This document shows, in pieces, positions 31 through 16,202 of a stretch of DNA of 64,000 nt (within the stretch, counting starts at the first letter, position 1; every line of letters begins with the position of its first letter). This stretch comes from Kudoa neothunni (Eukaryota; Animalia; Cnidaria). Position numbers and translations under genes: made by a program. Below the pieces are notes generated by a model, which worked only from the letters and a program-made list of their open reading frames with translations, was not told the origin of the DNA and did not search any database. The stretch lies in NCBI GenBank assembly GCA_964304625.1, contig OZ199838.1, positions 16,349,269 through 16,413,268 of the forward strand, read 5' to 3'.

Positions 31-316
31 TCACACGTTTCCTTCTGGGAGTCAGAATTTATAAGTGACATCATAAGCTTAAAACTTATAAAAGGTACTT
101 TATATATTTTTGTTTATTCGATTTAATCATGAATTATAAATGATCTATAATCATGAAGAAAATAAAATAGATGGCGATAACTCAGAGTTGACTCTTGAAG
201 GCAAGAAAAAAAATTCAAAGAGTTTTTTAGGACTCGTGGTGGTTGTTCCAGTTATGTTATTGTTGATTCTAATATCCACTGGAACATTTTTCTATATATT
301 GGTAGTCAAGAGATAA
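31..316 (+). CDS. 3' end (last two exons, 31-94 and 171-316) of a type I membrane protein, paralogue 1 of the local surface-protein family
   Basis: AG/GT-bounded 64-nt exon SHVSFWESEFISDIISLKLIK, then a phase-1 exon encoding ...FLGLVVVVPVMLLLILISTGTFFYILVVKR* (TM plus 2-residue basic tail). Exon size, phase and the W-x-x-E-F-[IL]-S pattern match the gene at 2779-4749. The 5' part lies outside the window. Confidence 0.75.
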
Positions 317-433
317 GCTTATTTCAATAAATATAATAAACAATATAAAATGCGACCAATGAATTTTATTTTATAATTTCTCATAATTTTTCCTATTATC
401 TTTCATCTATATACGTATATATGTGTATATATA

Positions 434-1538
434 CAGTGGATGAGGGGTGGATCGTAATTTCAAACAATCTTTTACTATTTACTTGGTAAAATATTTTAAT
501 TTGTGCAATTTTAATTAAAACTTTTGGCATATCTATTAAGTAATAATTGAGAGAACTAAAAAACAGTTCATAATTATAGGAGAAAAAAACGTCTACACCG
601 GAGTAATCTACTTTTTAAATAAACGGTAATTAATGTTTGTATAATATACATACATTAATACGTTCAAATATAGTACAAATTTATATAAAAACTTTAGTTA
701 ATCATTCAGTTTCTATATAAGGAAAATGTATTAATAAATAACCTATAAATATATTTGTTTTAGGTATTGTATTGGTATATATGCTACATTGTATATGTTG
801 TACGGTGATGGGTGCCACTTTTACCCAGGAATATAATTAAATAGTTCTTCCGGTTTTTGGATAATCGAACATTTATTTGCACATAATGTCAATTAAATCC
901 AAATAAAATTTAGAGTTTCTTCTGGTTAGCAAGATTTCCGGATAATCAAGATTCGACTGTATAATGTTGAATTATTATAAAATTTATTACTCAGATATAG
1001 TAATATTTTTGTGTCTTCTAACAATTATATTGTATACTTCTTGATCAATATCCGTTTGATTATTATAACTATTTCGAATAATGTCTTATATCAGACAAAT
1101 GAGAGAGGCAATTTAGAATTGAATAATTTTTCGTGCATTATAGTCATATTTATGAAACTTGTCATCTTTGTGACAGTTACCATCACTTAAAAAATCACTA
1201 AAATTGGCGTCGTTTTCAATATTGTTTCCGCCCCATATCTTCGCTAGTATTTGAATAACTTTATTATTTCATCTTTCTTTTTAAATGTCCTATCTCAATT
1301 TTTATTTCTGTCTCCCACTTCGCCATCAATCTAAAACGAAAATCTCAACAACTATTAAAATATATGAACTACGCGTCATTACAAAATAATCCATAAAAAA
1401 AAACATAATCAATTAAATTAAAAATACTTTATTTATATTCTTAACGGTCAAATAAATGTTTTTAAATAACTTATTATAATCTTATATGTGTGTTTATTTT
1501 GTAACATTTTCTCAAATTACGAACCCACTTCTTTACTG
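434..1538. mobile_element. Degenerate Tc1/pogo-type non-autonomous element; contains a nested pogo-type TIR at ~937-960
   Basis: TA|CAGTGGATGAGGGGTGGATCGTAATTT at 434 and imperfect inverted AAATTACGAACCCACTTCTTTACTG ending 1538. Same TIR family as 18703-19935. Internal CCGGATAATCAAGATTCGACTG|TA is a Tigger-like end. Confidence 0.55.
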
Positions 1539-2148
1539 TTTACAATAGCGCTGGGTTATTATGCACTCGAACTTCTCTCCTAACAAGTGTGTAGTATCTC
1601 TGCACAACTGTATATGTATATATACGTATATAAAATATGAAGTGCACTTTATATATTCTCTCGTGTTCATCTATTCTCGCTATTCAAAAATCATATCTCA
1701 ATTTCGGCGCGAAACACGAATTAAATCTATTCTAGTTATAAATTATTATATCAAACTAGTAACGAACCTATTTTTTAGATTTCGTATATCGTATAGGAAG
1801 GTAAATTTTTTGAGATATTTCGAAATAATCGCACTGGAAATTTTATATTGTTAATTAATAAATCCTTAAAAACGGTAAAATTTAAGTTATGTTACCGACA
1901 TTAATAAAATTTTATTATTTAAAGTTTTTCTCGTTTTCAACGTAATCAAGGCAAAATATGGTGTAAATATTATTACAACAAGTATTTTTTTAATAGGTAA
2001 AATTGTAAGAAATATTCACAATGAATTAATTTACAAATATTCAATAAAATATTTATATGGACTCTATAATAAAAAGTATATTATTCATATGGATAATGAG
2101 GTTATATTTAATATTTGTCTCGATTTACTTAAGAAATCCCACACTTAA

Positions 2149-2737
2149 AGGAACAGATACTCCCATCTCTTGGGAGTGAAAGCACTCCCAGTCCTAAGGT
2201 GTTGTTCCAAAACGACTTATGGTTATATTGTTGGGTATTTTTAAAGTTTCATAATTTTTCAGTAAATATAAGTAAAATAATAGATTAATTTGTTCGATAG
2301 ATTTTCATAATAACGCTTTTATTATCGTTTAGTAGATTGTATTAAACTGATTTATATTGAATATTATAGATTTTAAATATTATATAGATGATCGAATAAT
2401 AAAAGTATTAAATATCAAATATTTATTATATTATGTTTTAATAAATTGTCTTCAGTTGATTTATATTGAATAATATATACGTTTAATAATATTTTAATGA
2501 TTGTGTAATAAAAACTTTAAAACTGAAATTATTATTATCTCGTTAATAAAAAAGTGAAAGAAATTAGATATATTTTGTTAATGCAGAACGATTTTATTAT
2601 TATGTATTATTAATTATTTAGGTGTATTTAAAAAATTAATACGAATAAGATTAAAATATTTTGATTAGTTATTACGAGGCTATTAGTTTCTCATCCTACT
2701 TTCTAGACAGTATATAAATTACATCTGATGTGTATCT
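2149..2737. mobile_element. Possible Kolobok-like non-autonomous element (TTAA-flanked)
   Basis: TTAA|AGGAACAGAT... at left and ...ATGTGTATCT|TTAA at right (11/14 inverted match including TTAA); imperfect ~110-bp internal tandem duplication (2346-2540). Confidence 0.3.
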
Positions 2738-2778
2738 TTAAAACTTAAAAGTTAACTAGTAAATATTGTTTCCATAGA

Positions 2779-4749
2779 ATGATTGTTCATTGGATATTAT
2801 CAATTTTGCTTGTATATTATCCTAATTCACATGAAGGACAACAAGCTACCAAAGTTTTAATAATAATTAATTAGATTAGATAACTCAATTTTATCTATAG
2901 GAGATATTACTAAGTGTGATAGCTGGTGAACTAAGTGCTGAATTATATTCGTGTGAAGAAAATAGTATTAAATTTTTTGGTGTTCACTGTCACAGAGAAG
3001 ATTTATACAAATGTCCTAGTATTCTATTATCTGATTGTTATGTGCTCTATAATATTGTAATAAGAGTTGGAAAGTCAGGAAAACACTAAAATAGCTTTCG
3101 AAAATAATTGTCTCGAGAATGTTATGCAAAGTACCAATCTCGCAAGAGCCAACGTGCATGTGGTAGTACATAAGGGACCATATTATTCTGTGTAATGGAT
3201 TATATTTTAACATGGAAGAAAAAATAAATCTTTAATTTCTTTACCGAGCAGTTATCAGGAAGGCGAGCAAAACATAGAAACCAAACCTCGTAACTTGTCG
3301 ATTGCTGATGCAAATTTGATAATATCTTATTCTCAAATCACTGCATCGGAAATAACTTTTTATAGCTATTTGGTGTCAAACGAAGAAAGAATTCAAATTT
3401 TTACAGTAAAATATCGACTGAATTTTATAAAATACTATTATTGATATATTTAGGAAGGTGGGTTCAGTGAAGATATATTGGTAATTCGACCACATATCAA
3501 TGAAACAATAATTTCTCATTTTACTAAAATAAATATTGATTTATTTTATTATTATCATCTTTAAAATAAATATTAAAAATAATATAAATTAGGGATATGA
3601 CGACTACGGATACATATCCTTGAGTGAACGAATGTTTTCTATTGGATATTATGCAAATGCCAAAAATAACAATACCGCTGCTTGCGGTTCAGATTCAAAC
3701 AAATATAAATTTTATTCGAAAGAATTACTATATATGGGATATAATGAGATCTTTCCTAAATTAATATTTAAGCAAATATTGGTAATTGGAGAGACAATCA
3801 TCTATGATAATATTTTATTTTTAATAGCTTGAAAATTTTGAGTATGACGAGTCGAACAAGGAGGTTTCATTAAAATTTCCTTGTTATACCGAAAATAAAA
3901 TTATTACTGTTTTTACGGAAAAATATAAAGCTTGGTTTTCAAACATTTCTGGAGACATTGACAGATTTTTCAAACCAATCAATATTATAGAAGCCTATAA
4001 TTTTGTTTCTTGCTTCAATTTAACATACCAAACAGTATTAATTTATAATGAAAGTCATCCTTGGAAAGAAGTCACACAGGAATTTATTTCGATTGAATTT
4101 CCAAAGAAAAATGGAACCAGATACTTCCGTGTAACAACATAGTCATATTATTAAATCATGATAATTATATAATTTTAGGTTTATGGAAATTTTCCTACGT
4201 TGATTGAAAACAATGCTTACGCGTTATTCGAAAAAATACAAACATTACTGAATGAGACAAACTCTAGGTCGTTACTTATGGAAGTATATCTAGTGGACTT
4301 AAAAAAAATAATATATAAACTAGGATATATTATACAAAATGTATTATTATGCTCTTCTTTCCCATATCAATACAAAAATTTTTACTGACGATAATAAAAT
4401 ACTCTACAAATTTCACGTAAAAACCATCCATATATTAATAATAAAATTTTTTTTAGTCATATCATATCGGTTGGAAACCGGAGTTTCTTAGTAATCTAAC
4501 GAGGTCTGAATTTATTGGAGGTAAATTTTAAAGTCGATGTTTACACATGATGTTGGAAATCAATTATAATATATAAATCTAGGCATAAATACTAATAATG
4601 GTAATGATACTGGCGTTTCCCAAAGTAAGGAGGCAAAATCCGATTCCATCATTACTATTGTGATACCCATAATATTGCTTATAATTGCAGTGGTTGTTGG
4701 AGTGGGCTTCTTTATATTAGTCAAGAATCAGAGGAAAGCTACAAGCTAA
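2779..4749 (+). CDS. Multi-exon type I membrane glycoprotein of unknown family (paralogue 2, apparently intact)
   Basis: ATG 2779 gives signal-like MIVHWILSILLVYYPNSHEG. About 11 short-intron GT-AG exons splice into an open frame: Cys-rich N-terminus (CEENS..CHREDLYKCPS..CYV..CKVP..TCMC), several N-x-S/T sites, 64-nt exon 4457-4520 SYHIGWKPEFLSNLTRSEFIG, last exon 4583-4749 with TM IITIVIPIILLIIAVVVGVGFFILV and tail KNQRKATS*. Confidence 0.8.
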
Positions 4750-6712
4750 TATTTCAATTCGAACTACTTTATTTTAATTAATAACTTTTACTTTAACTTT
4801 AATTAGTTCGAAATCATCTCTAATTTATTCTTCCATGCATATATTTCAGAAGTTTTTCTGGCGACCGTGGTTATTCGTATGATATGAAATATTCGAAATA
4901 ATAATATATTATCTATATATCGATCCATTTAAATATATAAATATTTTTTAAATCTCTAAATATGATAATTTATCAAAAATTATCGAAATAATCAGTGATT
5001 TTAATAGTTAATTATTTGATTTTTCTCACTGCTCTAACCATGGTAGTTTTGTGAGGAATTAATTCCCTTCAAAAATAAAGTTGAAAATTTTGGTTGTAAT
5101 ATTACCCGGTTGTTACAACAGATATGGTTCAATTAAATCGGTCACATTATTTTATTTCTGAGTTTTCTTTAAACGTATGTTTCGAATCTAATTCAAGCTT
5201 TAAGTATCCTTTAGTTAATTGCTAAGGTTATTTTCTAATTCTTAAAGTGCATTTATAATTAATGATTAATTTCAAAATATGTTTCTTTTGCGTGGATTTT
5301 AAACTTATTATCGTAAAAAGATTTAATCACAGTATTTCACGATCAAGATACATTCATGTTAAATAAAATTTTGAAAAAATCATTTTAATTAAATAATCAA
5401 CAAGAAATACCCCAGAAAAAATGCGTGAAATCGGTTAATTGCCAGATTTTTGGTTACATTATTTAGCTACTATTTAAGTCAATATTTAATGCCAAAAAGT
5501 ACAATATTACTCATTATTATGAACGTCTTCAATCTAATGACCCAAAAACTGCCACTTTATCACGTTTTGAAATATCTATTATCTACTAATGACATCCTAG
5601 AGATGAAAAATAAAATAATCAAATCTTTAAATGTTTTTAGAATCTAAAAATAGAAATTATTTTCATGCAGGACAATTTCATTCTGTTGATGAAGATGTAT
5701 ATAAGTGAATTGGGTGGATACGAAGAAAAAAGATTGTAGTTAACGTCGTAACGGTAAACACCACGAGAAATTAATTAGCAAAAGAAAAAGATTTACCTAC
5801 ATGTACAATTTTAAAATTCTTGAAGGGATTCTTTAGTTTAAAAAAGGTCCAACATTAAAAAATCAAATTTTATTAACTAATCTGTTGATACTGCGTCTGA
5901 AACTACTTCAGAGTTGATCAATCAAATCAGAACATTTTTTAAAAGTCACTCTGAAAATTTTATTTACGATGTAGACGAATTCGCCTTATTCTTTATTCTA
6001 CCAATAGCAACAAGGGAAATATTTCATAGATTGTTGAAAAGTATTTTTGTGTTTTTAACATGTTTATCGAGCTTAATTAATTTTATAAATTAATATATAA
6101 TTAACTGGTCTTTTTAAACTCAACTTAATCATTAAATATTAAATGTCAATTTATTCTGAAATAATTTCGCACGCACATTCGTGAAATTGGACGTGATAGA
6201 TTTCTCGCAGTTTTTTTCTTGGTCCCGTGGAGATTCCGTGAAGTTGGTTCCTTATTGTAACACCAAGACAACATTTCTCTTATATAAACAAATAAATAAA
6301 CAACTTTGTAACGAATATTATGGATTTTTAAACGTTAATTTTACGCGATTTTATTATCTGATTTGATTTGACTTGATTAATGTTTTGCCCATGCATGATT
6401 ATCATATGTAAATGTGAATGAGGTAAGATCTAATACATTCTTTAAAAAAAAAAGAACGTCATAAATTTTCGAAAAAACTGGTACACGCGATTCAATTTGC
6501 AACAAAAACAATCTACAATTAACTAAATAGTAGAAAACATATGAGCACGCGATACTAATACATAAAGTAGGTTCGACGCAATAAGAACCATATCCTTACT
6601 TTCCATTACGATCGTTGCGTTTACAAAAATCTCATTTATTACTATATCTGAAAAGGGACAAAATCTATGTAATTTGTACAATTTTTAGATATCCCAAGAT
6701 TTTAAACTATAA

Positions 6713-7838
6713 TTATATACAATATAAATATATTCAAAGGAGGACTGTCGGTATGTTTGTGTCAGTACGTGTGCCCCTATGTATGTATGCGCGAATAATT
6801 TTTTCCCTATAGAGATACAGAGTCGTATCTAAAATTTTTATAAATTTGTGATATTTAAAAAAATTGTTTAATTGTTTTTGGACTACTAAAGTTTCCAAAA
6901 AATATTTATGAAATAGTGATTTTGTCGATTTAAAGTTGTTTATCGGATTACATGAGTTCAACTATAGATTTAGCGTTTGCTTATGTCATTGAGATAATAG
7001 GTTGAAGTTAACTATCTACCTTATACACTCTATCATATGTTAATTGAACGATGTCATCTATCTTTACGTATAAGGTTTGTGCGTTTATTTTATTGTTTGC
7101 TTAAATAAATTCCTTACATGGGGAGTTTTAATGTAATTGACTTGACAAACACATTTTGAAGACTCTATTAGTGGATTTATATACGAAAAAATGTTAATAT
7201 TTGAATTATTCTTGAGTTGGTTATGCGTGTTATAATCAGATAGATTGAAGCACTATAACGCAAGTACCGTGTTCGTAGATTTCATTGAAACCGTCCGTTA
7301 TGTTGAACTTACAGTGATTCAATTCAGTGCAGATGGTTAGTTCATCCGTTTATTTATATTATTTGTTAGAAAATGTGTATTAAAGTTTTTGAGGACCAAA
7401 GGATATTAATTTTAGTAATATCAATTAATTTTCATACGTTTTCTTCTATTTCTATTACTTTCTCCATTTTTTTATCTCAAAAAGTTGGTGGTACACACAA
7501 TTATTGAGCGGGACAAGAATTTGACTTTTAGAAATCCCCTGGGCCAAAAAATAACGTTTTAGATAACACTTTAATGGGATTTAAATAATTCGGGGATGAA
7601 AAAAATACGATGCTGACCTTGGCTCATTTAGCGTTGGTGCCGAGCCACGAAATTTTAAATGAACGCCAAAACATAATTTAAATTTCATAATCCAAATCGT
7701 TAAAGTATATTGCTTAAAAATTTTTAGTCATTTTGCATCTGTGGGTTAATTTTAGGATTTAATATATTTTTCGAATATTGTGAAGTAACGTATCTATGCG
7801 AAATCTTCCCCAAGCAACGCTGGGCAGTTCCCGCTAGT
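6713..7838 (+). mobile_element. Non-autonomous Helitron-like element
   Basis: 3' end: hairpin CCCAAGCAACGCTGGG followed by CTAG|T (7809-7838). Candidate 5' end: TATA-rich start followed by a GTATGTTTGTGT/GTATGTATG tract at ~6713-6790. 5' boundary approximate. Confidence 0.6.
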
Positions 7839-8165
7839 TAATTGATAAAATAAAATCAATAATAAAAAGTAGGAAATAATAAGTTACGATAACTCTTCCA
7901 TGGTAGAATTATTATTATTATTAATATTAAAAATAATATTTACAAAAGCCTAAGAAAAGAATGTTACATTGATACTTACTAGAAATTATGATTTTTTTAA
8001 TTTCTTGTTATTTTAATCATAATTTGGGATTGTAATATTCCGTAATAAATTTTAAGAAAATTATCTCCGTAAATTGATTTTATTTATCACAAAAAATTTA
8101 ATGTAACCTGAAATATTATAGATAGAATTAATTTTTATTAGTTTGATTATATTCAAATTTATAAC

Positions 8166-10120
8166 TAGGGTTGGCGATTTTCGACGTTTATCTTTTTACA
8201 AGTCGATGATTTTAATCGATCGAAATAAATAAAAATTTAAAATTAAAGTTTTTTAGTGAAAAACAAATTAAATCGACTAAAATAGTGACTAATAAGTAAT
8301 ATTGTAGTTGAGATTTACTGTGAGGGACCATTAAAATTTAACACTGATAACATTGTGAGGCGTTTATCTGAAAGATTAATCCTTTCTTTGCCAAATACAT
8401 GCCTTAATTTTGAAAAGCTCCTTTCGATGTTGATGGATGATGACACAGGAATAACCAATAAATCCTCAGAAATTTGTGATAAAATTTGTAATATGTTTGA
8501 TTTATTTCTCTAAAAATCATTGTTGATGGGTAGGTCTGATTCTTTCAAAATTTTGCAGAGGAGATCATATTCTTATTGAATTTCAGACTTTTCATTGATC
8601 TCTAATAAATAAGACCAGAAATCTCAACATTTTAGGTTGTAATTTTATTTTTTGGATCAATTTCTTTAATCGTTTGGAAAAATGTAGTCGATGGCAAACA
8701 ATCGTTAACATCATTTGGTAATGACTGATGAATCTCATAAAATTTAGAACAGAAACTTTCAGTTTTAATCGTTAATTGGCTCCTAGATTCAAATGGAATA
8801 AGTCCAAGAATATCTTTGTAAACTATTATTAAATGTTGGGGCGTTAATACCAGTCATCTTTTATCCAATCAGCAATACTTGAAATGCAGCAGTTATCTTC
8901 AGTTTCGATGAATCTAGAGAATTCAAACAATGGCGTTAGTTCATCTGTTAGAATATTAAATTAACAATAAAATATATTGTAACTAACTGAATAAATTTCA
9001 ATTATTGAGTTTAATTTTTTTCCTGTTTCATCATTTTTATTTTCTTTAAAATCATTGACTGCAGGATAATATTCTTTTATGTGTTTTAGACAGTTAATGA
9101 ACCTATACCATCATATGTCCAAAACACGAGGAATTTCCTTCGTTATTTTGAAGCTATTATTAAGGTGAACCCAAAAATTCCTTGTATAATTCCTACCTTT
9201 CGATAAAATGGTGGAAAAACTTTTAATATCAAAAAAGTATTCATTCGTAACTTTTTGAACTGTCAAATGAATAATGCGTGAATAATATGTAATTCCGATG
9301 ATAGTTGGATATATGGTTCTTAAATCCTTAGAATACTTTTTCATGTATTGTGTTGAGTCAGAAACATTCACAATGCATTTATCCCATTTTAAGTTGTGCC
9401 GATTTAGTGATTTAGAACACTGGGTATGTGATCAGCTATGGTTACGAATTTGCATCGAACAAGCCTCGAAGAATCGAGCAGTATAGTTCTCCATTTACCG
9501 GTAGCACAATCATGAAAAGAAGCTAATGTATTAAAAATCGGCCTTTTTTCGAATCAGGGGACTCATCAATTATTAAACTAAATCGTACATCCCTCATCAC
9601 TGATTTAATGTTATCGACACCTTGAAATACAACCGAAAGATGTTTACCAACTGTTTACCAATCAATATTTTCCCATCTGGCAAGGATCTCGACGCTTAGC
9701 AGTACATAGAATGTAACCCCCTCAAGTTACTCTTTTTATTAATTTCATCAAATGTAAGACTGTCAAAAATTATAATCTTCACCAAATCCATTTCAATATC
9801 ATTCGATTTTGATCTATCGAGATTTAGAATATTCTTAAGGGTATTGTTTTGGAAACATTTGACTGTATTGACAAATATTTCTTTTAACTGATATTTTCTT
9901 GAATTTTATTTTGTTTAAGTGGCAACAGAACCTTGCAATATTAACAAGACAAGGAATCGCCAACAGCATCTAAATCAAGCCACTCCACTAAATAATTAGT
10001 AATATCATATCGCTTCCCACCCATCTTAGTTCGATTTTAAGGTGCCAAAATCGATTTTTACCAATCAAAAAAATGTCGAACGATTTTATAAAATTAGAAG
10101 GTTTTAATCGATTAAAACCT
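8166..10120 (-). mobile_element. Decayed hAT transposon with transposase remnants
   Basis: TIR-like TAGGGTTGGCGATTTTCGA at 8166 and ATCGAT-rich subterminal repeats at both ends. Minus strand ~8340-8470 encodes LLVIPVSSSINIERSFSKLRHVFGKERINLSDKRL (hAT dimerisation motif). 9111-9371 encodes VSDSTQYMKK...IIGITYYSRIIHL (D..M...C..H-type core, degenerate). Many stops; right boundary approximate. Confidence 0.75.
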
Positions 10121-10452
10121 TAGATATAACTTATCTTGTGTTTGTGGGGGAATACGAATATTGGTATATATGTATACATAGATATAGGGTGCCGCTGACA
10201 GATTTTTCAGAATTATCACATTCGTAGTAGGTTATTAATTTGTTGTTTGTTCGAATCTCATCAACAAAGTGAAAATTGGCTCATGATAAAACAATTTTAA
10301 TAATAATAATAAATAATAATAATATTAATATTAAAAGGCAAAGATTTATTTTTAGTGATTTTTCTATTAAAATTGAGATCTGATACATACGTGTGCCAAA
10401 TATTCGTTTAATCTAATCATGATAAATTAATTATATTGGTTTATTTTGGATA

Positions 10453-11062
10453 GTTCAGGATTAGTTAATTTAATTGTTTATATTTTATTTTTAAATATTG
10501 AGACACTTCTATGTAGAAATAATTTTAGTATTATAATTTTATATTCGGTCAAATAAAAACCTACTGAATTATTGCATTAGAACGTAATGAATTGAATGTG
10601 TTACTATGCTTTTCATCGTTATGGTTATTGATATAACATTATACAAATGTTCAAACAAAATCTAAAAATTTCACGTCGAAATTATTAAGTAAAATTATTA
10701 AAGATCATAGTTTTTAGTCATATCTTTTCGATCCGGATTAGATGATAATTGGTAATCTAATCAGTGCTAAGTTTTAGGGGGACAAATATCGTGTTGTTTT
10801 TTGTATTTGTAATAAGAAATCAAGTAGAAATTGAAAATCATAGAAAAATCACGCATAATAATATTGATTCAGAAAATCGTCAGATAATAAGAGGAACGGA
10901 AATTTAACGAATGATTCAACAATCATGATTGTTGTTCTCGTCGTTTCAATTATAGTTTTAATATTCATTGGATTGGTTCTATACGTATTGGTGAAGGAGA
11001 AGAAGATAAATTTATGTTCAAAAAATAAATCAAAAGGAAGAACTTCCAAGAATGTCTTCTAA
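10453..11062 (+). pseudogene. Pseudogenised paralogue 3 of the surface-protein family (3' exons only)
   Basis: Exon at 10718 reads SYLFDPD*MIIGNLISAKF*G, homologous to the 64-nt exon, with two stops and a lost GT donor. The preceding exon ends AAATTTCAC|gt as in paralogue 2. Terminal exon 10873-11062 encodes TM IMIVVLVVSIIVLIFIGLVLYVLV plus a basic tail. Confidence 0.65.
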
Positions 11063-12084: not shown

Positions 12085-12145
12085 TAAATATGAATTTGGT
12101 TTCCAAGTTAAGGGTGTAAATTTAAAAACCCCTTGAGAACCCCTG
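12085..12145 (-). mobile_element. Terminal fragment of the hAT MITE family (copy 1)
   Basis: AAATATGAATTTGGTTTCCAAGTTAAGGGTGTAAATTT...TTGAGAACCCCTG closely matches 42558-42617 and the reverse complement of 49221-49280. Confidence 0.7.
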
Positions 12146-12238
12146 GAAATTAATGACTTAAAATATCAAATAATGTTTTGTGATCGAAAAATTTCTATCC
12201 TAAATACTACTTATAAACTATAGTTAACGAAAATTAAT

Positions 12239-15222
12239 TTAATCTCTTTTCTTCTTCAATACCACGATGCCAACTATTGCAATAACCACAACCACAGCAA
12301 CGCATGCAATAATGATTCTATAAAAAGGTTAGTTCAAATATCAATATTTAAAAATGTTTACATAAGTTTAGTTTTATCCCTAAAAAATATTAAATTGGAT
12401 AAAAGCATATTATTAAGCTCACCCTGAACTACTCTTTGCTCCTACGATGTATAACATTAAATTAAATTACGAACAAATAATATACCTTGTTGTATGTCAG
12501 CACCGCCAAAAATTGTATTATCTTCAGCACTGTAAACAGTCAAATAATAGTTATTCCCATCAGGTAAATTATTTATTTTGAATTCTTTACAGGTCACGAA
12601 AGCAGCACATCTGTCCACGTTTCTTCTCATGCAAGATTTTACTACCGCATTAGACTTGACACTACTGTTACGTAACTCCCATTTGCATTTTGATTTATCG
12701 TTCATAGTGGCTGGAAGTGTTGTGGTTACAATGAAACTGTTCCCATCACGTGTAATGACGACTGATATCAATTTTGAGGAGTCAGTTGGGTTTACTTGTG
12801 GTGCACCTAATATAAGTTTCGTTTAAACATTTCTTAATAGAGACATTAATTGTAATACTTGATTCTATTATATGTTCTTTTTCTGAAGATTTTCCGATAG
12901 CTGTGACTAAAATTTTGTATGTATTTGCTGCTTCATACTCGGGAAATGTTATGGAACTGCAAAGGGGATTTGAAGAACATATGTTAATGCTGTTCGCGGC
13001 ACCATCACGTTGTGTATCTGAATTATCTGAAATTGACGATTACGCCGTTGGCATTGGACCACCATCTGCTACCATTGGCACAGCAATTCTAGCTATGTTG
13101 AGATCTGCGGAACTTAAACTGGAAGTAGGAGCTGAAGCGGGCGTTGGTACCACTGGGGCGGTGACAGGTGTCGTTACTTTCGGCACCACCGGACATGTGT
13201 AATAGTCTGTGTAATCGTTACCAGTCTTCTTTTGTACGACATAACTGCATGTTGCAGTTGGATCCACGGAATTTAATCGTGCCTTCAATGACAAACCATC
13301 CAACGTGATCTTGTGTGTTATCGTTAATGTTGTTAATACTATTAAAAATTTAAAGAGTAAATTATAACTTCAATAACCTGTTTGTATATTTGGGTAATCT
13401 TTTATGCCGTAATCCTTATGTGCGATCACTCTGATGTCATAAGGTGTGTTTGGCTCAAGATCTTCTATCGTAACTTGTTCACTGCAAATTTCTCTACACG
13501 GGATGTTGCCATTGCACTTCGCGTGGAAAAAGCTATCTAATCCAGTTGGACTTACTAAATACTCACATGAAGGTTCATCTTTCTTATCTTGAGGTAGAGT
13601 TCCGTCAATAGTTGTAAGAGAGATTGTCGTGTCTGTCTTTGTTGGTGCGGTAGTTGTAAATAATTTACTTGCTCCATGTTCTTTAAAAGTCATTATTTTT
13701 TATAATAAATATATTAAAATTTACCCGTTCTTATGAATATCTGTTCTTTAAAATCCGTTGGGATATCAGTAGTAGGTTGAAATGTGATTTCAATCATGTA
13801 GGCTGTTCCTGCTGCAAGTCTTTGAATCACCAATTTTGTTGTGCAATCAGTTTTGCATTTAGTATCGCTGGAACTATTAGTGGAACTGTTAGTGTCGCAT
13901 GTTGTCTCTGTTAGAGATCCTGGTGCGATTTTGTTTGCCAAATAATGTTTAAGAGTACATGAAGTAAATTGTGGAGTTGTTCCTTCTCTAAATGGGGCAA
14001 CATCAAAGGAAACACCATCATTAGTATAAATAGAAAGCAATCCACCGGCTGGTTCAGTAATTGCTATAGAAAATAATCAAAAATGCGTGTTAATATTCGA
14101 AGTACCAAATTTAGTTTGTTTGTAACCATCTAAACTACCTCCAGTAGCTTCTATGTCATGATGTCTAGTTTGAATCAAAATATTGTAGAATTTTTGACCC
14201 CTAACGCCGTTGAGCTCGACGTACTTACAGGGAGCATAACATTTTTTATCATTAACACCACAAACGGACGTATATGATTGACCCTCTGTTCCAGTTAAGC
14301 CATTTTTAAGACTGAATAGACATATTTCAGATGATAGGGAATTGGTGAATTTAATTCCGACTTTATCTTCAGTTTTGGCAATAATATAGAACTGGGGCTT
14401 ATAAATATCGATGTTTTTCTTCATATATTGATTGGGCATATTGTAAAAGAAACCGGGATATTTTTCGCATCTTACTTCGTAATGAGGTATCAATAAATCA
14501 AAATCTACTTTGTTTGCTGAAGTATCAGTAATACAATCTTGCCCTTTGGTGCCATCTACATATTTAATATTCTTATAATAAATTGGGCAATCTACACGTG
14601 CACATGTTTTCGTTGCGAATTTCAACTTTTTGTCGTCAGTGTCTGTAGACACGGTAATTTGTGGATTAGCCAACAACGCTAAATTCAATTTATTTTCATG
14701 TTAAATTAAATTGACTTACGTATTGAATATCCGAATACTTTTGATCCTGCTCCATTAACTGCCTCTTTAACATTAGTTACGCTAGTGCCGACGAAGACAT
14801 ATATGTATTTAGTTCTTGGTGACAGCTTTTTGTAATCAATAGTATTCGTAGTGATTTCACAGCTGACAACACATTTACAATTCCCAGCCTCGCTAATATT
14901 AGCAGTGCAAGCTTCGATGTCTACAAACGCATTTGCTGTTGTACTAGTAGTATCTGCAATTTCTGCTTCTTTAGATCTCATTAAACGACACTTTCTGCCA
15001 GTTACGTAATCAGAGCCTTCAAGACTGAGTTTAATTTTATTATCACCAGTTGATTCCTTCACAATCTGATATTTCAACGTTTTCGTTGGAGCTGTAGCTT
15101 GAGAACCTGAACTTCCATCAGCATTGGATATACCTGATATTAAGACACCTAAACTTACATTATTATTAAAATTAACCCAGAAAGATACCTAAAACAAGGT
15201 AGAGGAATCCAGATATTTTCAT
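12239..15222 (-). CDS. Type I membrane protein, ~858 codons, with six Cys-containing FN3-like modules; one in-frame TAA at 13040-13042
   Basis: Exons 15189-15222, 14720-15148, 14106-14678, 13725-14063, 13378-13680, 12859-13338, 12486-12806, 12423-12441, 12239-12317, all GT-AG. Signal peptide MKISGFLYLVLGVLISGISNA; FN3 tyrosine-corner motifs (LSPRTKY, LAAGTAY, LEPNTPY, YEAANTY, LPDGNNY); TM IIIACVAVVVVIAIVGIVVL and tail KKKRD*. Confidence 0.85.
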
Positions 15223-16202
15223 AATTGACAATTAAATGACCAACCAATTGTTGGTTCGGAATACAATTGACCCGAATTTAACTCATTTATAGATATAATA
15301 ATTCATTCATTGTCAGATAGCGAAACCTAGACTAGATAATAATTATTCAAGTTATTAAAAAATTAATCCCAACCAATTTTTTACAACCTAGCTCATATCG
15401 ATGTGGTAAATTATAATTTTTAATTGGATCAAAATTTTTCCCAATACATTTTTTTAGGGAAATATCGAAATAAAATGTTAAACTCTAGCAAAAAAATGGT
15501 AATACTATTTATTATTGGGAGTATTTATTGTTCCAATCATTTATTAAATGAATCAGTTCCTCTAGACATCAAAATTTTATGTCTTACGGAATACAGGTCC
15601 ATACTGTTTATTATACCAATGCGGAAGGATTCCGAAAATGGTTAACTATTTAATTTTTTATTGTGACCCGAATGACATCAATAATATTTCAAATCTTTCT
15701 GAAATAATTACTTTAACCTTCCTGGGACCATGCGAGGTCATTCTTGAACCTTTTTTTTGTAAATGTTTGTTTTTACCTACTTAAACTTTTCATTTTAATT
15801 TTTCAGTGTATGAAATATTAGATTAATGTGTATTGTTTAGAAATACAAAATTTCAGAGAAATTATAGTATTCTACCGCCTAAAAATTCTATTTAATGTTA
15901 CGTAGCATTGATATTTGTTATTTCACATTATTTTATACTGTTGTATTAAGTGTATTTAATTTCTATGATAAGAACAATGATCATTGCAATATATATTGTC
16001 ACGACAAAAATGAGAAATATTGTAATTTGTAACCATTATTGCTATCTATCTACCTACGCTAAGGTCTCGATATAACGTGTTTTCCCATTTTTCATTAATA
16101 TTTATTCCTGAAAATTCAAGAAAATCGATAAAACTACATCTTAAACTGTAATTAGTCTCATATAAGCCATTAATTTCATTAAACAGTTAAGATCGTCAAG
16201 AA

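What the first reader, a model, noticed from the sequence alone, without database searches (positions are those of the whole stretch)
12239..15222. Exon-modular surface protein built from an unrecognised 4-Cys FN3-like repeat with a hypervariable loop
Seen: six ~100-aa modules share a pattern of T-x-D-G-like N-terminal turn, C1 (CRL/CLF/CTL/CEY/CSY/CKW), C2, a loop, C3-x3-5-C4, and an L-x-P-x-T-x-Y-type tyrosine corner. The C2-C3 loop varies from 5 aa (CNGNIPC) to 13 aa (CDTNSSTNSSSDTKC) to ~70 aa of Pro/Thr/Ser-rich sequence in module 5. Module exons are all multiples of 3 and flanked by phase-1 introns (429, 573, 339, 303, 480, 321 nt), so any can be skipped or duplicated in frame. The cytoplasmic tail is only KKKRD. 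Known: canonical FN3 domains usually lack disulfides, and class 1-1 exons are the substrate of exon shuffling. Inference: a lineage-specific adhesin/variant-surface-antigen scaffold displaying disulfide-pinned variable loops. This is the best candidate for an undescribed system in the window.
Basis: partly seen in the sequence, partly recalled or inferred. Interest (0 to 1): 0.8.

Follow-up and report, generated by a model that had tools for sequence, protein, structure and literature searches.

The report
Huge Kudoa FN3-type surface-protein family
This gene is one copy, interrupted by a single stop codon, of an undescribed family of at least 212 membrane-anchored surface proteins in the tuna-muscle parasite Kudoa neothunni; they are built from disulfide-bearing fibronectin-type modules and diversified by swapping module-sized pieces between copies, which makes the family a candidate for the parasite's variable outer face.

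Summary
It is a minus-strand, nine-exon gene (15222..12239): signal peptide, six module exons of 429/573/339/303/480/321 nt, all flanked by phase-1 GT-AG introns of 39-52 nt, a 19-nt micro-exon, then a TM helix and a KKKRD tail.

Corrections:
- Exon 6 has an in-frame TAA (13042..13040) where every paralogue has Lys.
- Exon 3 encodes two beta-sandwich domains, not one, so the ectodomain has seven domains.

Fold: module 4 is FN3 (Pfam fn3 at threshold; AF2 pLDDT 87; Z 8-8.9 to FN3 domains). Modules 3-6 are homologous by profile comparison. Modules 1 and 2b share the four-Cys signature.

All sampled copies have the same fixed architecture, and about 20-30 % are broken. Module trees conflict and the 3' half is homogenised, which indicates gene conversion. 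Only loop windows reach pN/pS >= 1. An exhaustive profile search of 1.84 billion proteins found 19 unnamed fragments, and no paper describes the family.

There is no expression evidence, so the surface or variant-antigen role is inferred. Other first readers of this scan noted the same family in two other windows.

The parts
15189..15222 (-). Exon 1: ATG and first 11 codons of the signal peptide (MKISGFLYLVL-G), ends in phase 1
   Evidence: ATG at 15222, GT donor at 15188; similar M-K-I-x-G-F-L-Y-L-V-L-G starts upstream of m1 in close paralogues
14720..15148 (-). Exon 2 = module 1 (143 codons): rest of signal peptide plus the membrane-distal domain with four conserved Cys (C..C..C-x3-C); most variable module
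   Evidence: identity to paralogues 29-67 %; pN/pS up to 2.2 in its C1-C2 segment; fold not predicted, only weak FN3/Ig leads
14106..14678 (-). Exon 3 = module 2 (191 codons): two beta-sandwich domains, 2a (Ig-like, 4 Cys) and 2b (FN3-like with the four-Cys signature); most conserved, family-signature part
   Evidence: AF2 pLDDT 82.6; Foldseek to two-domain cytokine-receptor modules E 6e-5; VIA-align residues 1-81 Z 7.3, 94-190 Z 6.4-6.9 to FN3; no Pfam or PDB sequence hit
13725..14063 (-). Exon 4 = module 3: four-Cys FN3-type module, 13-aa Ser/Thr-rich C2-C3 loop; highly variable among paralogues
   Evidence: hhalign m3~m4 97 %, E 6e-11 with Cys in register; profile hits titin FN3 E 0.0085
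13378..13680 (-). Exon 5 = module 4: archetypal four-Cys FN3 module (C38, C55, C61, C65 invariant)
   Evidence: Pfam fn3 25.5 bits (cut-off 25), 23/45 paralogues hit fn3; AF2 pLDDT 86.6, pTM 0.80; FN3 domains Z 8.0-8.9, rmsd 2.3-3.5 A over 83-92 residues
12859..13338 (-). Exon 6 = module 5: four-Cys FN3-type module split by a long loop
   Evidence: m5b~m6 98 % by hhalign; exon borders
12980..13192 (-). C2-C3 loop of module 5: 71 codons, Pro/Thr/Ser/Ala-rich (mucin-like), with the conserved core LNIARIAVP
   Evidence: Loop 45-90 aa, mean 42 % S/T/P in 40/40 intact paralogues, conserved [IV]-[AV]-R core; local GC up to 0.62
13040..13042 (-). In-frame TAA inside the module 5 loop; paralogues have Lys here
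   Evidence: a DNA contig of run X3 has the reference letter, and one of run X2 reads A>T at 13042 (= AAA)
12486..12806 (-). Exon 7 = module 6: membrane-proximal four-Cys FN3-type module (C3-x5-C4), 87-97 % identical among the closest paralogues
   Evidence: hhalign m4~m6 98 %, E 5e-14; alignment A5
12423..12441 (-). Exon 8: 19-nt micro-exon (..AKSSS..) that sets the frame of the last exon
   Evidence: AG/GT sites and sequence conserved in 11/11 close paralogues while the flanking introns vary
12239..12317 (-). Exon 9: transmembrane helix IIIACVAVVVVIAIVGIVVL, tail KKKRD, stop
   Evidence: every sampled paralogue for which enough downstream sequence was held ends in one TM helix plus a 4-8-residue basic tail

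Best explanation
The locus is one member of a Kudoa-lineage multigene family with at least 212 copies. This copy is interrupted by a single nonsense codon that may be allelic. The family encodes type I membrane glycoproteins with a fixed architecture: a signal peptide, a rod of seven beta-sandwich domains (six FN3-type modules each with four conserved cysteines, plus one extra Ig-like domain in exon 3), a mucin-like Ser/Thr/Pro loop inside the fifth module, one TM helix and a 4-8-residue basic tail that is too short to signal. Shown here: the gene model, the FN3 fold of module 4, the two-domain fold of module 2, homology among modules 3-6, family size, fixed architecture, tandem arrays, about 20-30 % broken copies, module-scale mosaicism, homogenisation of the 3' half, and overall purifying selection with loop-restricted excess of amino-acid change. 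Inferred: the proteins sit on the parasite's plasma membrane as a passive binding or coat layer at the interface with the host (or with other parasite cells). The membrane-distal modules 1 and 3 and the BC/FG-type loops would provide variable contact surfaces, and gene conversion among paralogues would generate new combinations, as in other parasites' contingency surface families.
For: Gene model. Organism: G000 is 40.26 Mb in 4 contigs, and the fourth works out at 18,219 bp, the mitochondrial contig length given in PMC12239612. FN3 fold: Pfam fn3, PDB profile hit to titin 1.9e-8, AF2 models, Foldseek and VIA-align. Module homology: hhalign 97-98 %. Family: at least 150 scored hits for each of m2 and m4 with 444/445 candidates; 212 pattern matches against 0 control, pattern present in 46/47 sampled copies; all 46 sampled paralogues keep m1-m6, and a TM helix plus short tail was found wherever enough downstream sequence was held. 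Selection: dN/dS 0.2-0.55 per module; loop windows reach or exceed 1. Mosaicism: dS 0.55-0.65 in m1-m3 against 0.15 in m5b-m6; nucleotide identity 0.67-0.72 against 0.90-0.94 with introns included; conflicting module trees with AU p 5e-6, <1e-100 and 0.009. Restriction: 1 hit among 5.8e9 proteins, 19 among 1.84e9, all unnamed. Literature: nothing found.
Against: There is no expression, protein or localisation evidence. The only RNA run tried laid no read, and the holders X1-X3 are DNA. The genome paper reports that very few transcriptome reads map to the parasite. Average dN/dS is below 1 in every module. The window copy itself has a premature stop, and 9-14 of 47 sampled copies are broken. 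Kudoa grows inside muscle fibres, where antibody pressure on a surface coat is not obvious (my own knowledge). The AU-tested groups were chosen after seeing the trees. Disulfide pairing and the fold of module 1 were not tested.
Confidence: 0.6

Rival explanations
1. The family serves the parasite's own cell-cell adhesion or spore construction (valve, suture or capsulogenic cell contacts in the multicellular spore). Many paralogues would be used in different cell types or stages, and the family would not face the host.
For: FN3 chains with short tails are classic adhesion and matrix modules (fold matches to NCAM, contactin, DCC, tenascin and titin). Purifying selection dominates. Architecture is rigidly conserved.
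Against: A structural role does not readily explain more than 200 copies, the mosaic exchange, the excess of replacement changes in loops or the roughly 20-30 % pseudogenes.
Confidence: 0.2
2. The family is a self/non-self (allorecognition) or gamete/cell-fusion recognition system, like the polymorphic Ig-like Alr genes of the cnidarian Hydractinia. Diversity in the distal domains would set specificity.
For: Myxozoans are cnidarians. The family has clustered type I membrane proteins with divergent, hard-to-recognise beta-sandwich domains, the greatest diversity in the distal domain, and gene conversion. Hydractinia Alr is cited in PMC11792419.
Against: No sequence link was found and none was specifically tested. 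The cytoplasmic tail of 5 residues lacks any signalling motif. Copies are spread over all three chromosomes rather than in one complex.
Confidence: 0.08
3. The proteins are ligand-binding subunits of a receptor (cytokine-receptor-like) that signals through a partner chain.
For: Module 2 aligns over its whole length to D1D2 modules of class I/II cytokine receptors and tissue factor (E 6e-5, Z about 7).
Against: Identity is about 10 % and TM is 0.42-0.45. No WSxWS-like motif occurs in any of 329 modules scanned, and module 2 has almost no Trp. The match is what any FN3 tandem gives. A receptor does not need 200 paralogues.
Confidence: 0.05
4. The family is a decaying, unexpressed repeat, effectively a dispersed pseudogene family or cargo of a mobile element.
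For: The window copy has a stop and 9-14 of 47 copies are broken. The genome paper.6 % of the assembly repeats and does not mention the family. There is no RNA evidence.
Against: dN/dS is 0.2-0.55. The 28 cysteines, the splice sites and the 19-nt micro-exon are conserved. About 70-80 % of copies are intact. A relative with the same six modules exists in a distant organism whose SNF5 is only 44 % identical.
Confidence: 0.05

Closest known systems
Fibronectin type III domain (Pfam PF00041) chains of metazoan cell-surface proteins (NCAM, contactin, DCC/neogenin, tenascin)
   Same: Same fold for module 4 (Z 8-8.9). Tyrosine-corner region detectable by sequence. One domain per phase 1-1 exon, type I membrane anchoring, tandem rod of domains.
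   Different: Four conserved cysteines per domain (canonical FN3 has none). Most modules fall below Pfam thresholds. No Ig domains or cytoplasmic signalling region. A mucin-like loop lies inside a domain. More than 200 paralogues in a 40-Mb genome.
Cytokine-binding homology region (two FN3 domains with conserved disulfides) of class I cytokine receptors such as gp130 and the common gamma chain
   Same: Module 2 is a two-domain beta-sandwich tandem with conserved disulfide-forming cysteines and superposes over its full length.
   Different: No WSxWS motif and different Cys spacing. About 10 % identity. No Box1/Box2 tail. The similarity is at the level of fold only.
Parasite contingency surface families diversified by segmental gene conversion (Babesia ves, Trypanosoma VSG, Plasmodium var/rif/stevor, Giardia VSP)
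   Same: Hundreds of paralogues, tandem arrays on all chromosomes, many pseudogenes, mosaic exchange of segments, variable distal parts with a conserved membrane-proximal part, and in Giardia VSP a 5-residue tail (my own knowledge for VSP; VSP features also in 10.64898/2026.02.11.705288).
   Different: Unrelated folds and sequences. Here the host is an animal parasite of cnidarian descent. No evidence yet of mutually exclusive expression or switching. The VSP-, RIFIN- and STEVOR-like genes reported in Sphaerospora molnari are a different set of genes.
Plasmodium 6-Cys (s48/45) domain proteins and CSS
   Same: Parasite surface proteins built from disulfide-stabilised beta-sandwich modules. There is a weak PDB profile hit of module 4 to CSS (E 0.02).
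   Different: No Pfam s48/45 hit. Four rather than six cysteines. The FN3 topology matches are much stronger.

Membership tests
Fibronectin type III superfamily | Sequence match to the fn3 profile at or above the curated threshold | tested here: met
   Module 4: PF00041 E 1.6e-5, 25.5 bits against a cut-off of 25; 23 of 45 paralogous m4 hit at E<=0.01. The m4 profile hits titin FN3 at 1.9e-8. Modules 1, 2, 3, 5 and 6 do not hit Pfam on their own.
Fibronectin type III superfamily | Seven-strand beta-sandwich with FN3 topology | tested here: met
   Module 4 model (pLDDT 86.6): the top 50 VIA-align rows are almost all FN3, Z 7.6-8.9, rmsd 2.3-3.5 A, 83-92 of 100 residues. Module 2 residues 94-190: FN3 at Z 6.4-6.9. 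Modules 3, 5 and 6 are inferred through hhalign at 97-98 %. Module 1 was not folded.
Fibronectin type III superfamily | Tyrosine corner / L-x-P-x-T-x-Y in the E-F region | tested here: met
   L74, P76 and Y80 of module 4 are invariant or nearly so. PDB and Pfam alignments centre on this stretch.
Class I cytokine receptor (cytokine-binding homology region) | WSxWS motif in the second FN3 domain | tested here: not met
   No W[ST]xW[ST] in 329 module sequences of 47 paralogues; mean 0.02 Trp per module 2.
Class I cytokine receptor (cytokine-binding homology region) | Cytoplasmic Box1/Box2 region for JAK binding | tested here: not met
   The tail is 4-8 residues (KKKRD, KKKN, WKNKN) wherever it could be read in the sampled paralogues.
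Variant surface antigen system (functional class) | Large paralogous repertoire with segmental exchange | tested here: met
   At least 212 copies. Incongruent module trees, AU p 5e-6 to 0.009. dS and identity gradient along the gene.
Variant surface antigen system (functional class) | Surface exposure and exclusive or switching expression | not testable with these tools
   No RNA run of the parasite was available: X10 laid 0 reads and X1-X3 are DNA.
Plasmodium 6-Cys s48/45 family | Match to the s48/45 profile and six-Cys pattern | tested here: not met
   No s48/45 hit at E<=10 in Pfam for any module. There are four conserved Cys per domain.

The most novel reading that the evidence does not exclude
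Kudoa, and perhaps other myxozoans, possess an animal-derived analogue of protozoan variant-surface-antigen systems: several hundred FN3-based coat proteins whose distal modules are reshuffled between paralogues by module-scale gene conversion and are expressed variably at the host interface. This would be the first such repertoire defined in a metazoan parasite of cnidarian origin. The conserved [IV]-A-R core in the mucin-like loop may be a processing site.
Probability: 0.3. Interest if true: 0.85.

Novelty: new variant of a known kind. Interest (0 to 1): 0.62.

Why it matters
Myxozoans cause major losses in fisheries and aquaculture. Kudoa species cause post-mortem muscle liquefaction, and one species causes food poisoning. 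Almost nothing is known of their surface molecules, and their genomes are full of uncharacterised lineage-specific genes. This family would be about 4 % of the 5,316 annotated genes of K. neothunni, and it is not mentioned in the genome paper. It has the genomic hallmarks of host-interface contingency families, yet it is built from an ordinary animal adhesion module. It gives concrete candidates for diagnostics, for vaccine antigens in farmed hosts, and for asking how an intracellular animal parasite presents itself to a vertebrate host. It also shows that hint-based annotation can miss the largest gene family of a parasite genome.

Tried and rejected
- Plain BLAST between modules and against the window gave no significant inter-module similarity and no second family member in the window.
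- The long 439-445-aa frames in some paralogues looked like intron loss. They are 45-nt introns that happen to be open in frame, so I did not use them as proteins.
- The QTRHHD motif pattern was too strict for a census (44 matches). I replaced it with a pattern on invariant residues (212 matches).
- The module 2 profile had no hit against PDB sequences or Pfam. The module 1 profile had no hit against the PDB, and the atlas gave it only weak leads.
- Link to the FN3-like giant protein / adhesion-GPCR locus noted by the scan at C1:2.56 Mb: the two 10-kb pieces I could fetch gave no HMM hit, so no link could be shown.
- The neighbouring orphan glycoprotein array at window 31-11062 gave no HMM hit.
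- Disulfide pairing could not be read, because model coordinates are not returned.
All searches were exon by exon, by reference.
Full report
OBSERVATION. Translating the minus strand of window 12100-15400 gives a series of open pieces. With GT-AG borders these join into a nine-exon gene:
- e1 15222-15189 (34 nt; ATG and the start of a signal peptide)
- e2 15148-14720 (429 nt)
- e3 14678-14106 (573 nt)
- e4 14063-13725 (339 nt)
- e5 13680-13378 (303 nt)
- e6 13338-12859 (480 nt)
- e7 12806-12486 (321 nt)
- e8 12441-12423 (a 19-nt micro-exon)
- e9 12317-12239 (TM helix, KKKRD, stop)

The six introns between e1 and e7 are 39-52 nt long, 9-26 % GC and in phase 1. Exons are 32-42 % GC.

First, exon 6 holds an in-frame TAA at 13042..13040, which a separate note of the scan (s1-718237) had seen. 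Second, exon 3 is not one module (see below).

The spliced protein was never joined, searched or folded. Every search was exon by exon, by reference.

ORGANISM. G000 has 40,260,978 bases in four contigs. Three of them are 17,154,348, 12,040,071 and 11,048,340 bases, which leaves 18,219 for the fourth. PMC12239612 describes a Kudoa neothunni assembly recovered from yellowfin tuna data: 40.2 Mb, three chromosome scaffolds, an 18,219-bp mitochondrial contig, a median intron of 49 bp and exonic GC of 36.8 %. I take the genome to be that assembly, which agrees with earlier follow-up notes of the scan. That paper reports 5,316 hint-based gene predictions and 45.6 % repeats, says very few transcriptome reads map to the parasite, and does not discuss gene families or surface proteins.

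THE STOP CODON. All 13 close paralogous loci whose reading frame is open at that position have Lys at the TAA position ('..AAK SSVP..'). The window copy therefore differs by one base (AAA to TAA).

The four runs that hold the stretch come from one sample. The three I laid (X1-X3) are DNA, since their contigs run through the introns. One X3 contig carries the reference letter, and one X2 contig reads A>T at 13042, which restores AAA. Because contigs of close paralogues can also be laid at 95 % likeness, I cannot say whether this is the second allele or a paralogue. The RNA run tried (X10) laid nothing, so expression is untested.

WHAT THE MODULES ARE.
- Pfam finds only fn3 on module 4 (E 1.6e-5, 25.5 bits, cut-off 25). 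It hits 23 of 45 paralogous m4.
- A profile of m4 hits FN3 domains of titin (1.9e-8), fibronectin, Dscam, contactin and NCAM in the PDB. Profiles of m3 and m6 hit titin FN3 weakly (E 0.006-0.009). Profiles of m1 and m2 hit nothing.
- AlphaFold2 with a 45-row paralogue alignment gives m4 pLDDT 86.6 and pTM 0.80. Foldseek's best rows are uniformly FN3. VIA-align gives Z 8.0-8.9, rmsd 2.3-3.5 A over 83-92 of 100 residues to FN3 domains.
- Module 2 (pLDDT 82.6) is two sandwiches. Residues 1-81 match Ig-like domains (Z 7.3, rmsd 2.4 A). Residues 94-190 match FN3 domains (Z 6.4-6.9). The whole module matches D1D2 pairs of cytokine receptors and tissue factor (Foldseek E 6e-5, TM 0.42-0.45; Z about 7). 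This is fold-level likeness only: identity is about 10 % and no WSxWS-like motif exists in any of 329 modules scanned.
- Profile-profile comparison links m3~m4 (97 %, E 6e-11, all four Cys in register), m4~m6 (98 %) and m5b~m6 (98 %). m1~m5a is weak (58 %). m2 is unlinked.
- Four Cys are conserved in m1, m3, m4 and m6, and eight in m2. The spacing C3-x3-C4 (x5 in m6) recurs in m1, m2b, m3, m4 and m5.

So the ectodomain is a chain of seven beta-sandwich domains. The fold of m1 and the disulfide pairing remain untested.

THE FAMILY.
Identities run from 100 % down to about 40-45 %, on all three chromosomes, often in same-strand tandem arrays such as C2:9.80-9.87 Mb, C1:16.44-16.56 Mb and C3:0.05-0.46 Mb.
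- A degenerate DNA pattern built on invariant m2 residues (P-x-Y-E-x-x-C-x-x-Y-P) matches 212 places against 0 for the reversed control. It is present in 46 of my 47 sampled copies. The family therefore has at least 212 copies, about 4 % of the annotated gene number.
- All 46 sampled paralogues (L002-L057) have m1-m6 in the same order and spacing. Wherever enough downstream sequence was held, they end in one TM helix and a 4-8-residue basic tail.
- Module number varied once: L052 has two tandem m6.
- Nine of the 47 copies (the window gene included) have a stop or frameshift inside a module, and five more are ambiguous.
- The window itself holds only this one member.

HOW IT EVOLVES.
- In the window copy's clade (11-12 genes on three chromosomes), dN/dS per module is 0.21-0.55. 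dS falls from 0.55-0.65 in m1-m3 to 0.37 (m4), 0.27 (m5a) and about 0.15 (m5b, m6).
- Nucleotide identity with introns included is 0.67-0.72 in m1 and m3 and about 0.8 in m2. It is 0.90-0.94 from the 3' half of m4 to the TM exon, and drops again beyond the stop codon.
- Module trees conflict with high support. AU tests reject the m1 sister pair on m2 data (p 5e-6), the m2 pair on m1 data (p < 1e-100) and the m6 pair on m2 data (p 0.009). The groups were chosen after seeing the trees, so these p-values are optimistic.
- I read this as exchange of module-sized segments between paralogues plus homogenisation of the membrane-proximal half.
- Windows of 12 codons reach pN/pS >= 1 only in loops: the m1 C1-C2 segment (1.7-2.2), the m1 F-G region (1.3-1.4), the m3 B-C loop (1.7) and the m4 B-C loop (1.1-1.2). 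Strand cores lie at 0.1-0.3 and the C2-C3 loops at 0.2-0.8.
- In standard FN3 topology the BC, C'E and FG loops lie at one pole. That is established knowledge of the fold, not checked on coordinates here.

THE C2-C3 LOOP. It is fixed in length in m4 and m6 and varies in length in m1 and m3. It is expanded by about 45 Ser in the m3 of L037. In m5 it is always long: 45-90 aa in 40 of 40 intact copies, 42 % Ser/Thr/Pro on average. Between clades it cannot be aligned except for a conserved [IV]-[AV]-R core. A conserved arginine motif inside it might be a processing or binding site, but that is inference only.

RELATIVES AND LITERATURE.
- The word-indexed search of 5.8 billion proteins found one relative, P0001 (45 % identity, ENA metagenome).
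- The exhaustive profile search of 1.84 billion representatives found 19, all unnamed singleton fragments from ENA or Logan.
- One contig from SRR31175926 (GC 17 %) carries m1-m6 in order. A SNF5 fragment from a second contig of that same run is only 44 % identical to the K. neothunni orthologue. The family therefore extends to at least one distant relative.
- P0019, from another run, is a continuous protein with an m2-like domain followed by modules showing the same Cys signature.
- Full-text searches found no description of the family. The surface families proposed for Sphaerospora molnari (VSP-, ETRAMP- and RIFIN/STEVOR-like) are different genes.
- Within this scan, first readers noted the same family in two other windows (s1-687453, s1-712007), without follow-up.

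VERDICT. The module is a disulfide-bearing variant of FN3, not a new fold. The new result is the family: at least 212 copies, a fixed seven-domain type I architecture with no signalling tail, mosaic evolution, variable distal modules and loops, many broken copies, restriction to the Kudoa lineage, and no prior description.

I think a host- or cell-interface binding or coat role is the most likely function (0.6 for the overall explanation). A true variant-antigen system has a probability of about 0.3. A purely structural adhesion role is the main rival. Expression data would decide between them.

Noticed in passing
window 12980-13192 and the same loop in L002-L057: The long Ser/Thr/Pro-rich C2-C3 loop of module 5 cannot be aligned between clades but always contains a short conserved core [IV]-[AV]-R (LNIARIAVP, IKIARSG, IEVARSA, IGVARSA). 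It may be a processing or binding site.
   Followed up: partly
L052 (G000:C1:13258189-13262689, minus strand): This paralogue has two tandem module 6 exons, and about 730 nt of unexplained sequence lies between module 5 and the first of them. It is the only change in module number among the 47 sampled copies.
   Followed up: partly
L037 (G000:C3:2801992-2806492): A run of about 45 serines sits inside the C2-C3 loop of module 3, in the same loop that carries the mucin-like insert in module 5.
   Followed up: no
L018 (G000:C1:16869720-16874220) and other paralogues with 439-445-aa frames: In some copies the 45-nt introns between modules 2, 3 and 4 are free of stops and a multiple of three, so intron retention would stay in frame. 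This is not intron loss.
   Followed up: partly
window 31-11062: The neighbouring array noted by the scan as an orphan type I glycoprotein family gives no hit to any of the module HMMs of this family, so it appears to be a separate family.
   Followed up: partly
L059 (Logan SRR31175926 contig, 4,611 nt, GC 17 %): A complete m1-m6 relative lies in a very AT-rich genome. Its exon-sized frames abut or overlap (gaps of about 0-13 nt), so the intron structure seems to differ from K. neothunni. The organism is unknown, and its SNF5 is 44 % identical to that of K. neothunni.
   Followed up: partly
L003 (G000:C3:302896-306192), last exon: A one-base insertion in the TM exon of this otherwise intact close paralogue shifts the frame before the KKKRD tail.
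   Followed up: no
window 12200-13550 in runs X1-X3: Summed contig depth is 5-40 times higher over the 3' half of the gene than over modules 2-3. This fits the near-identity of that half among many paralogues.
   Followed up: no
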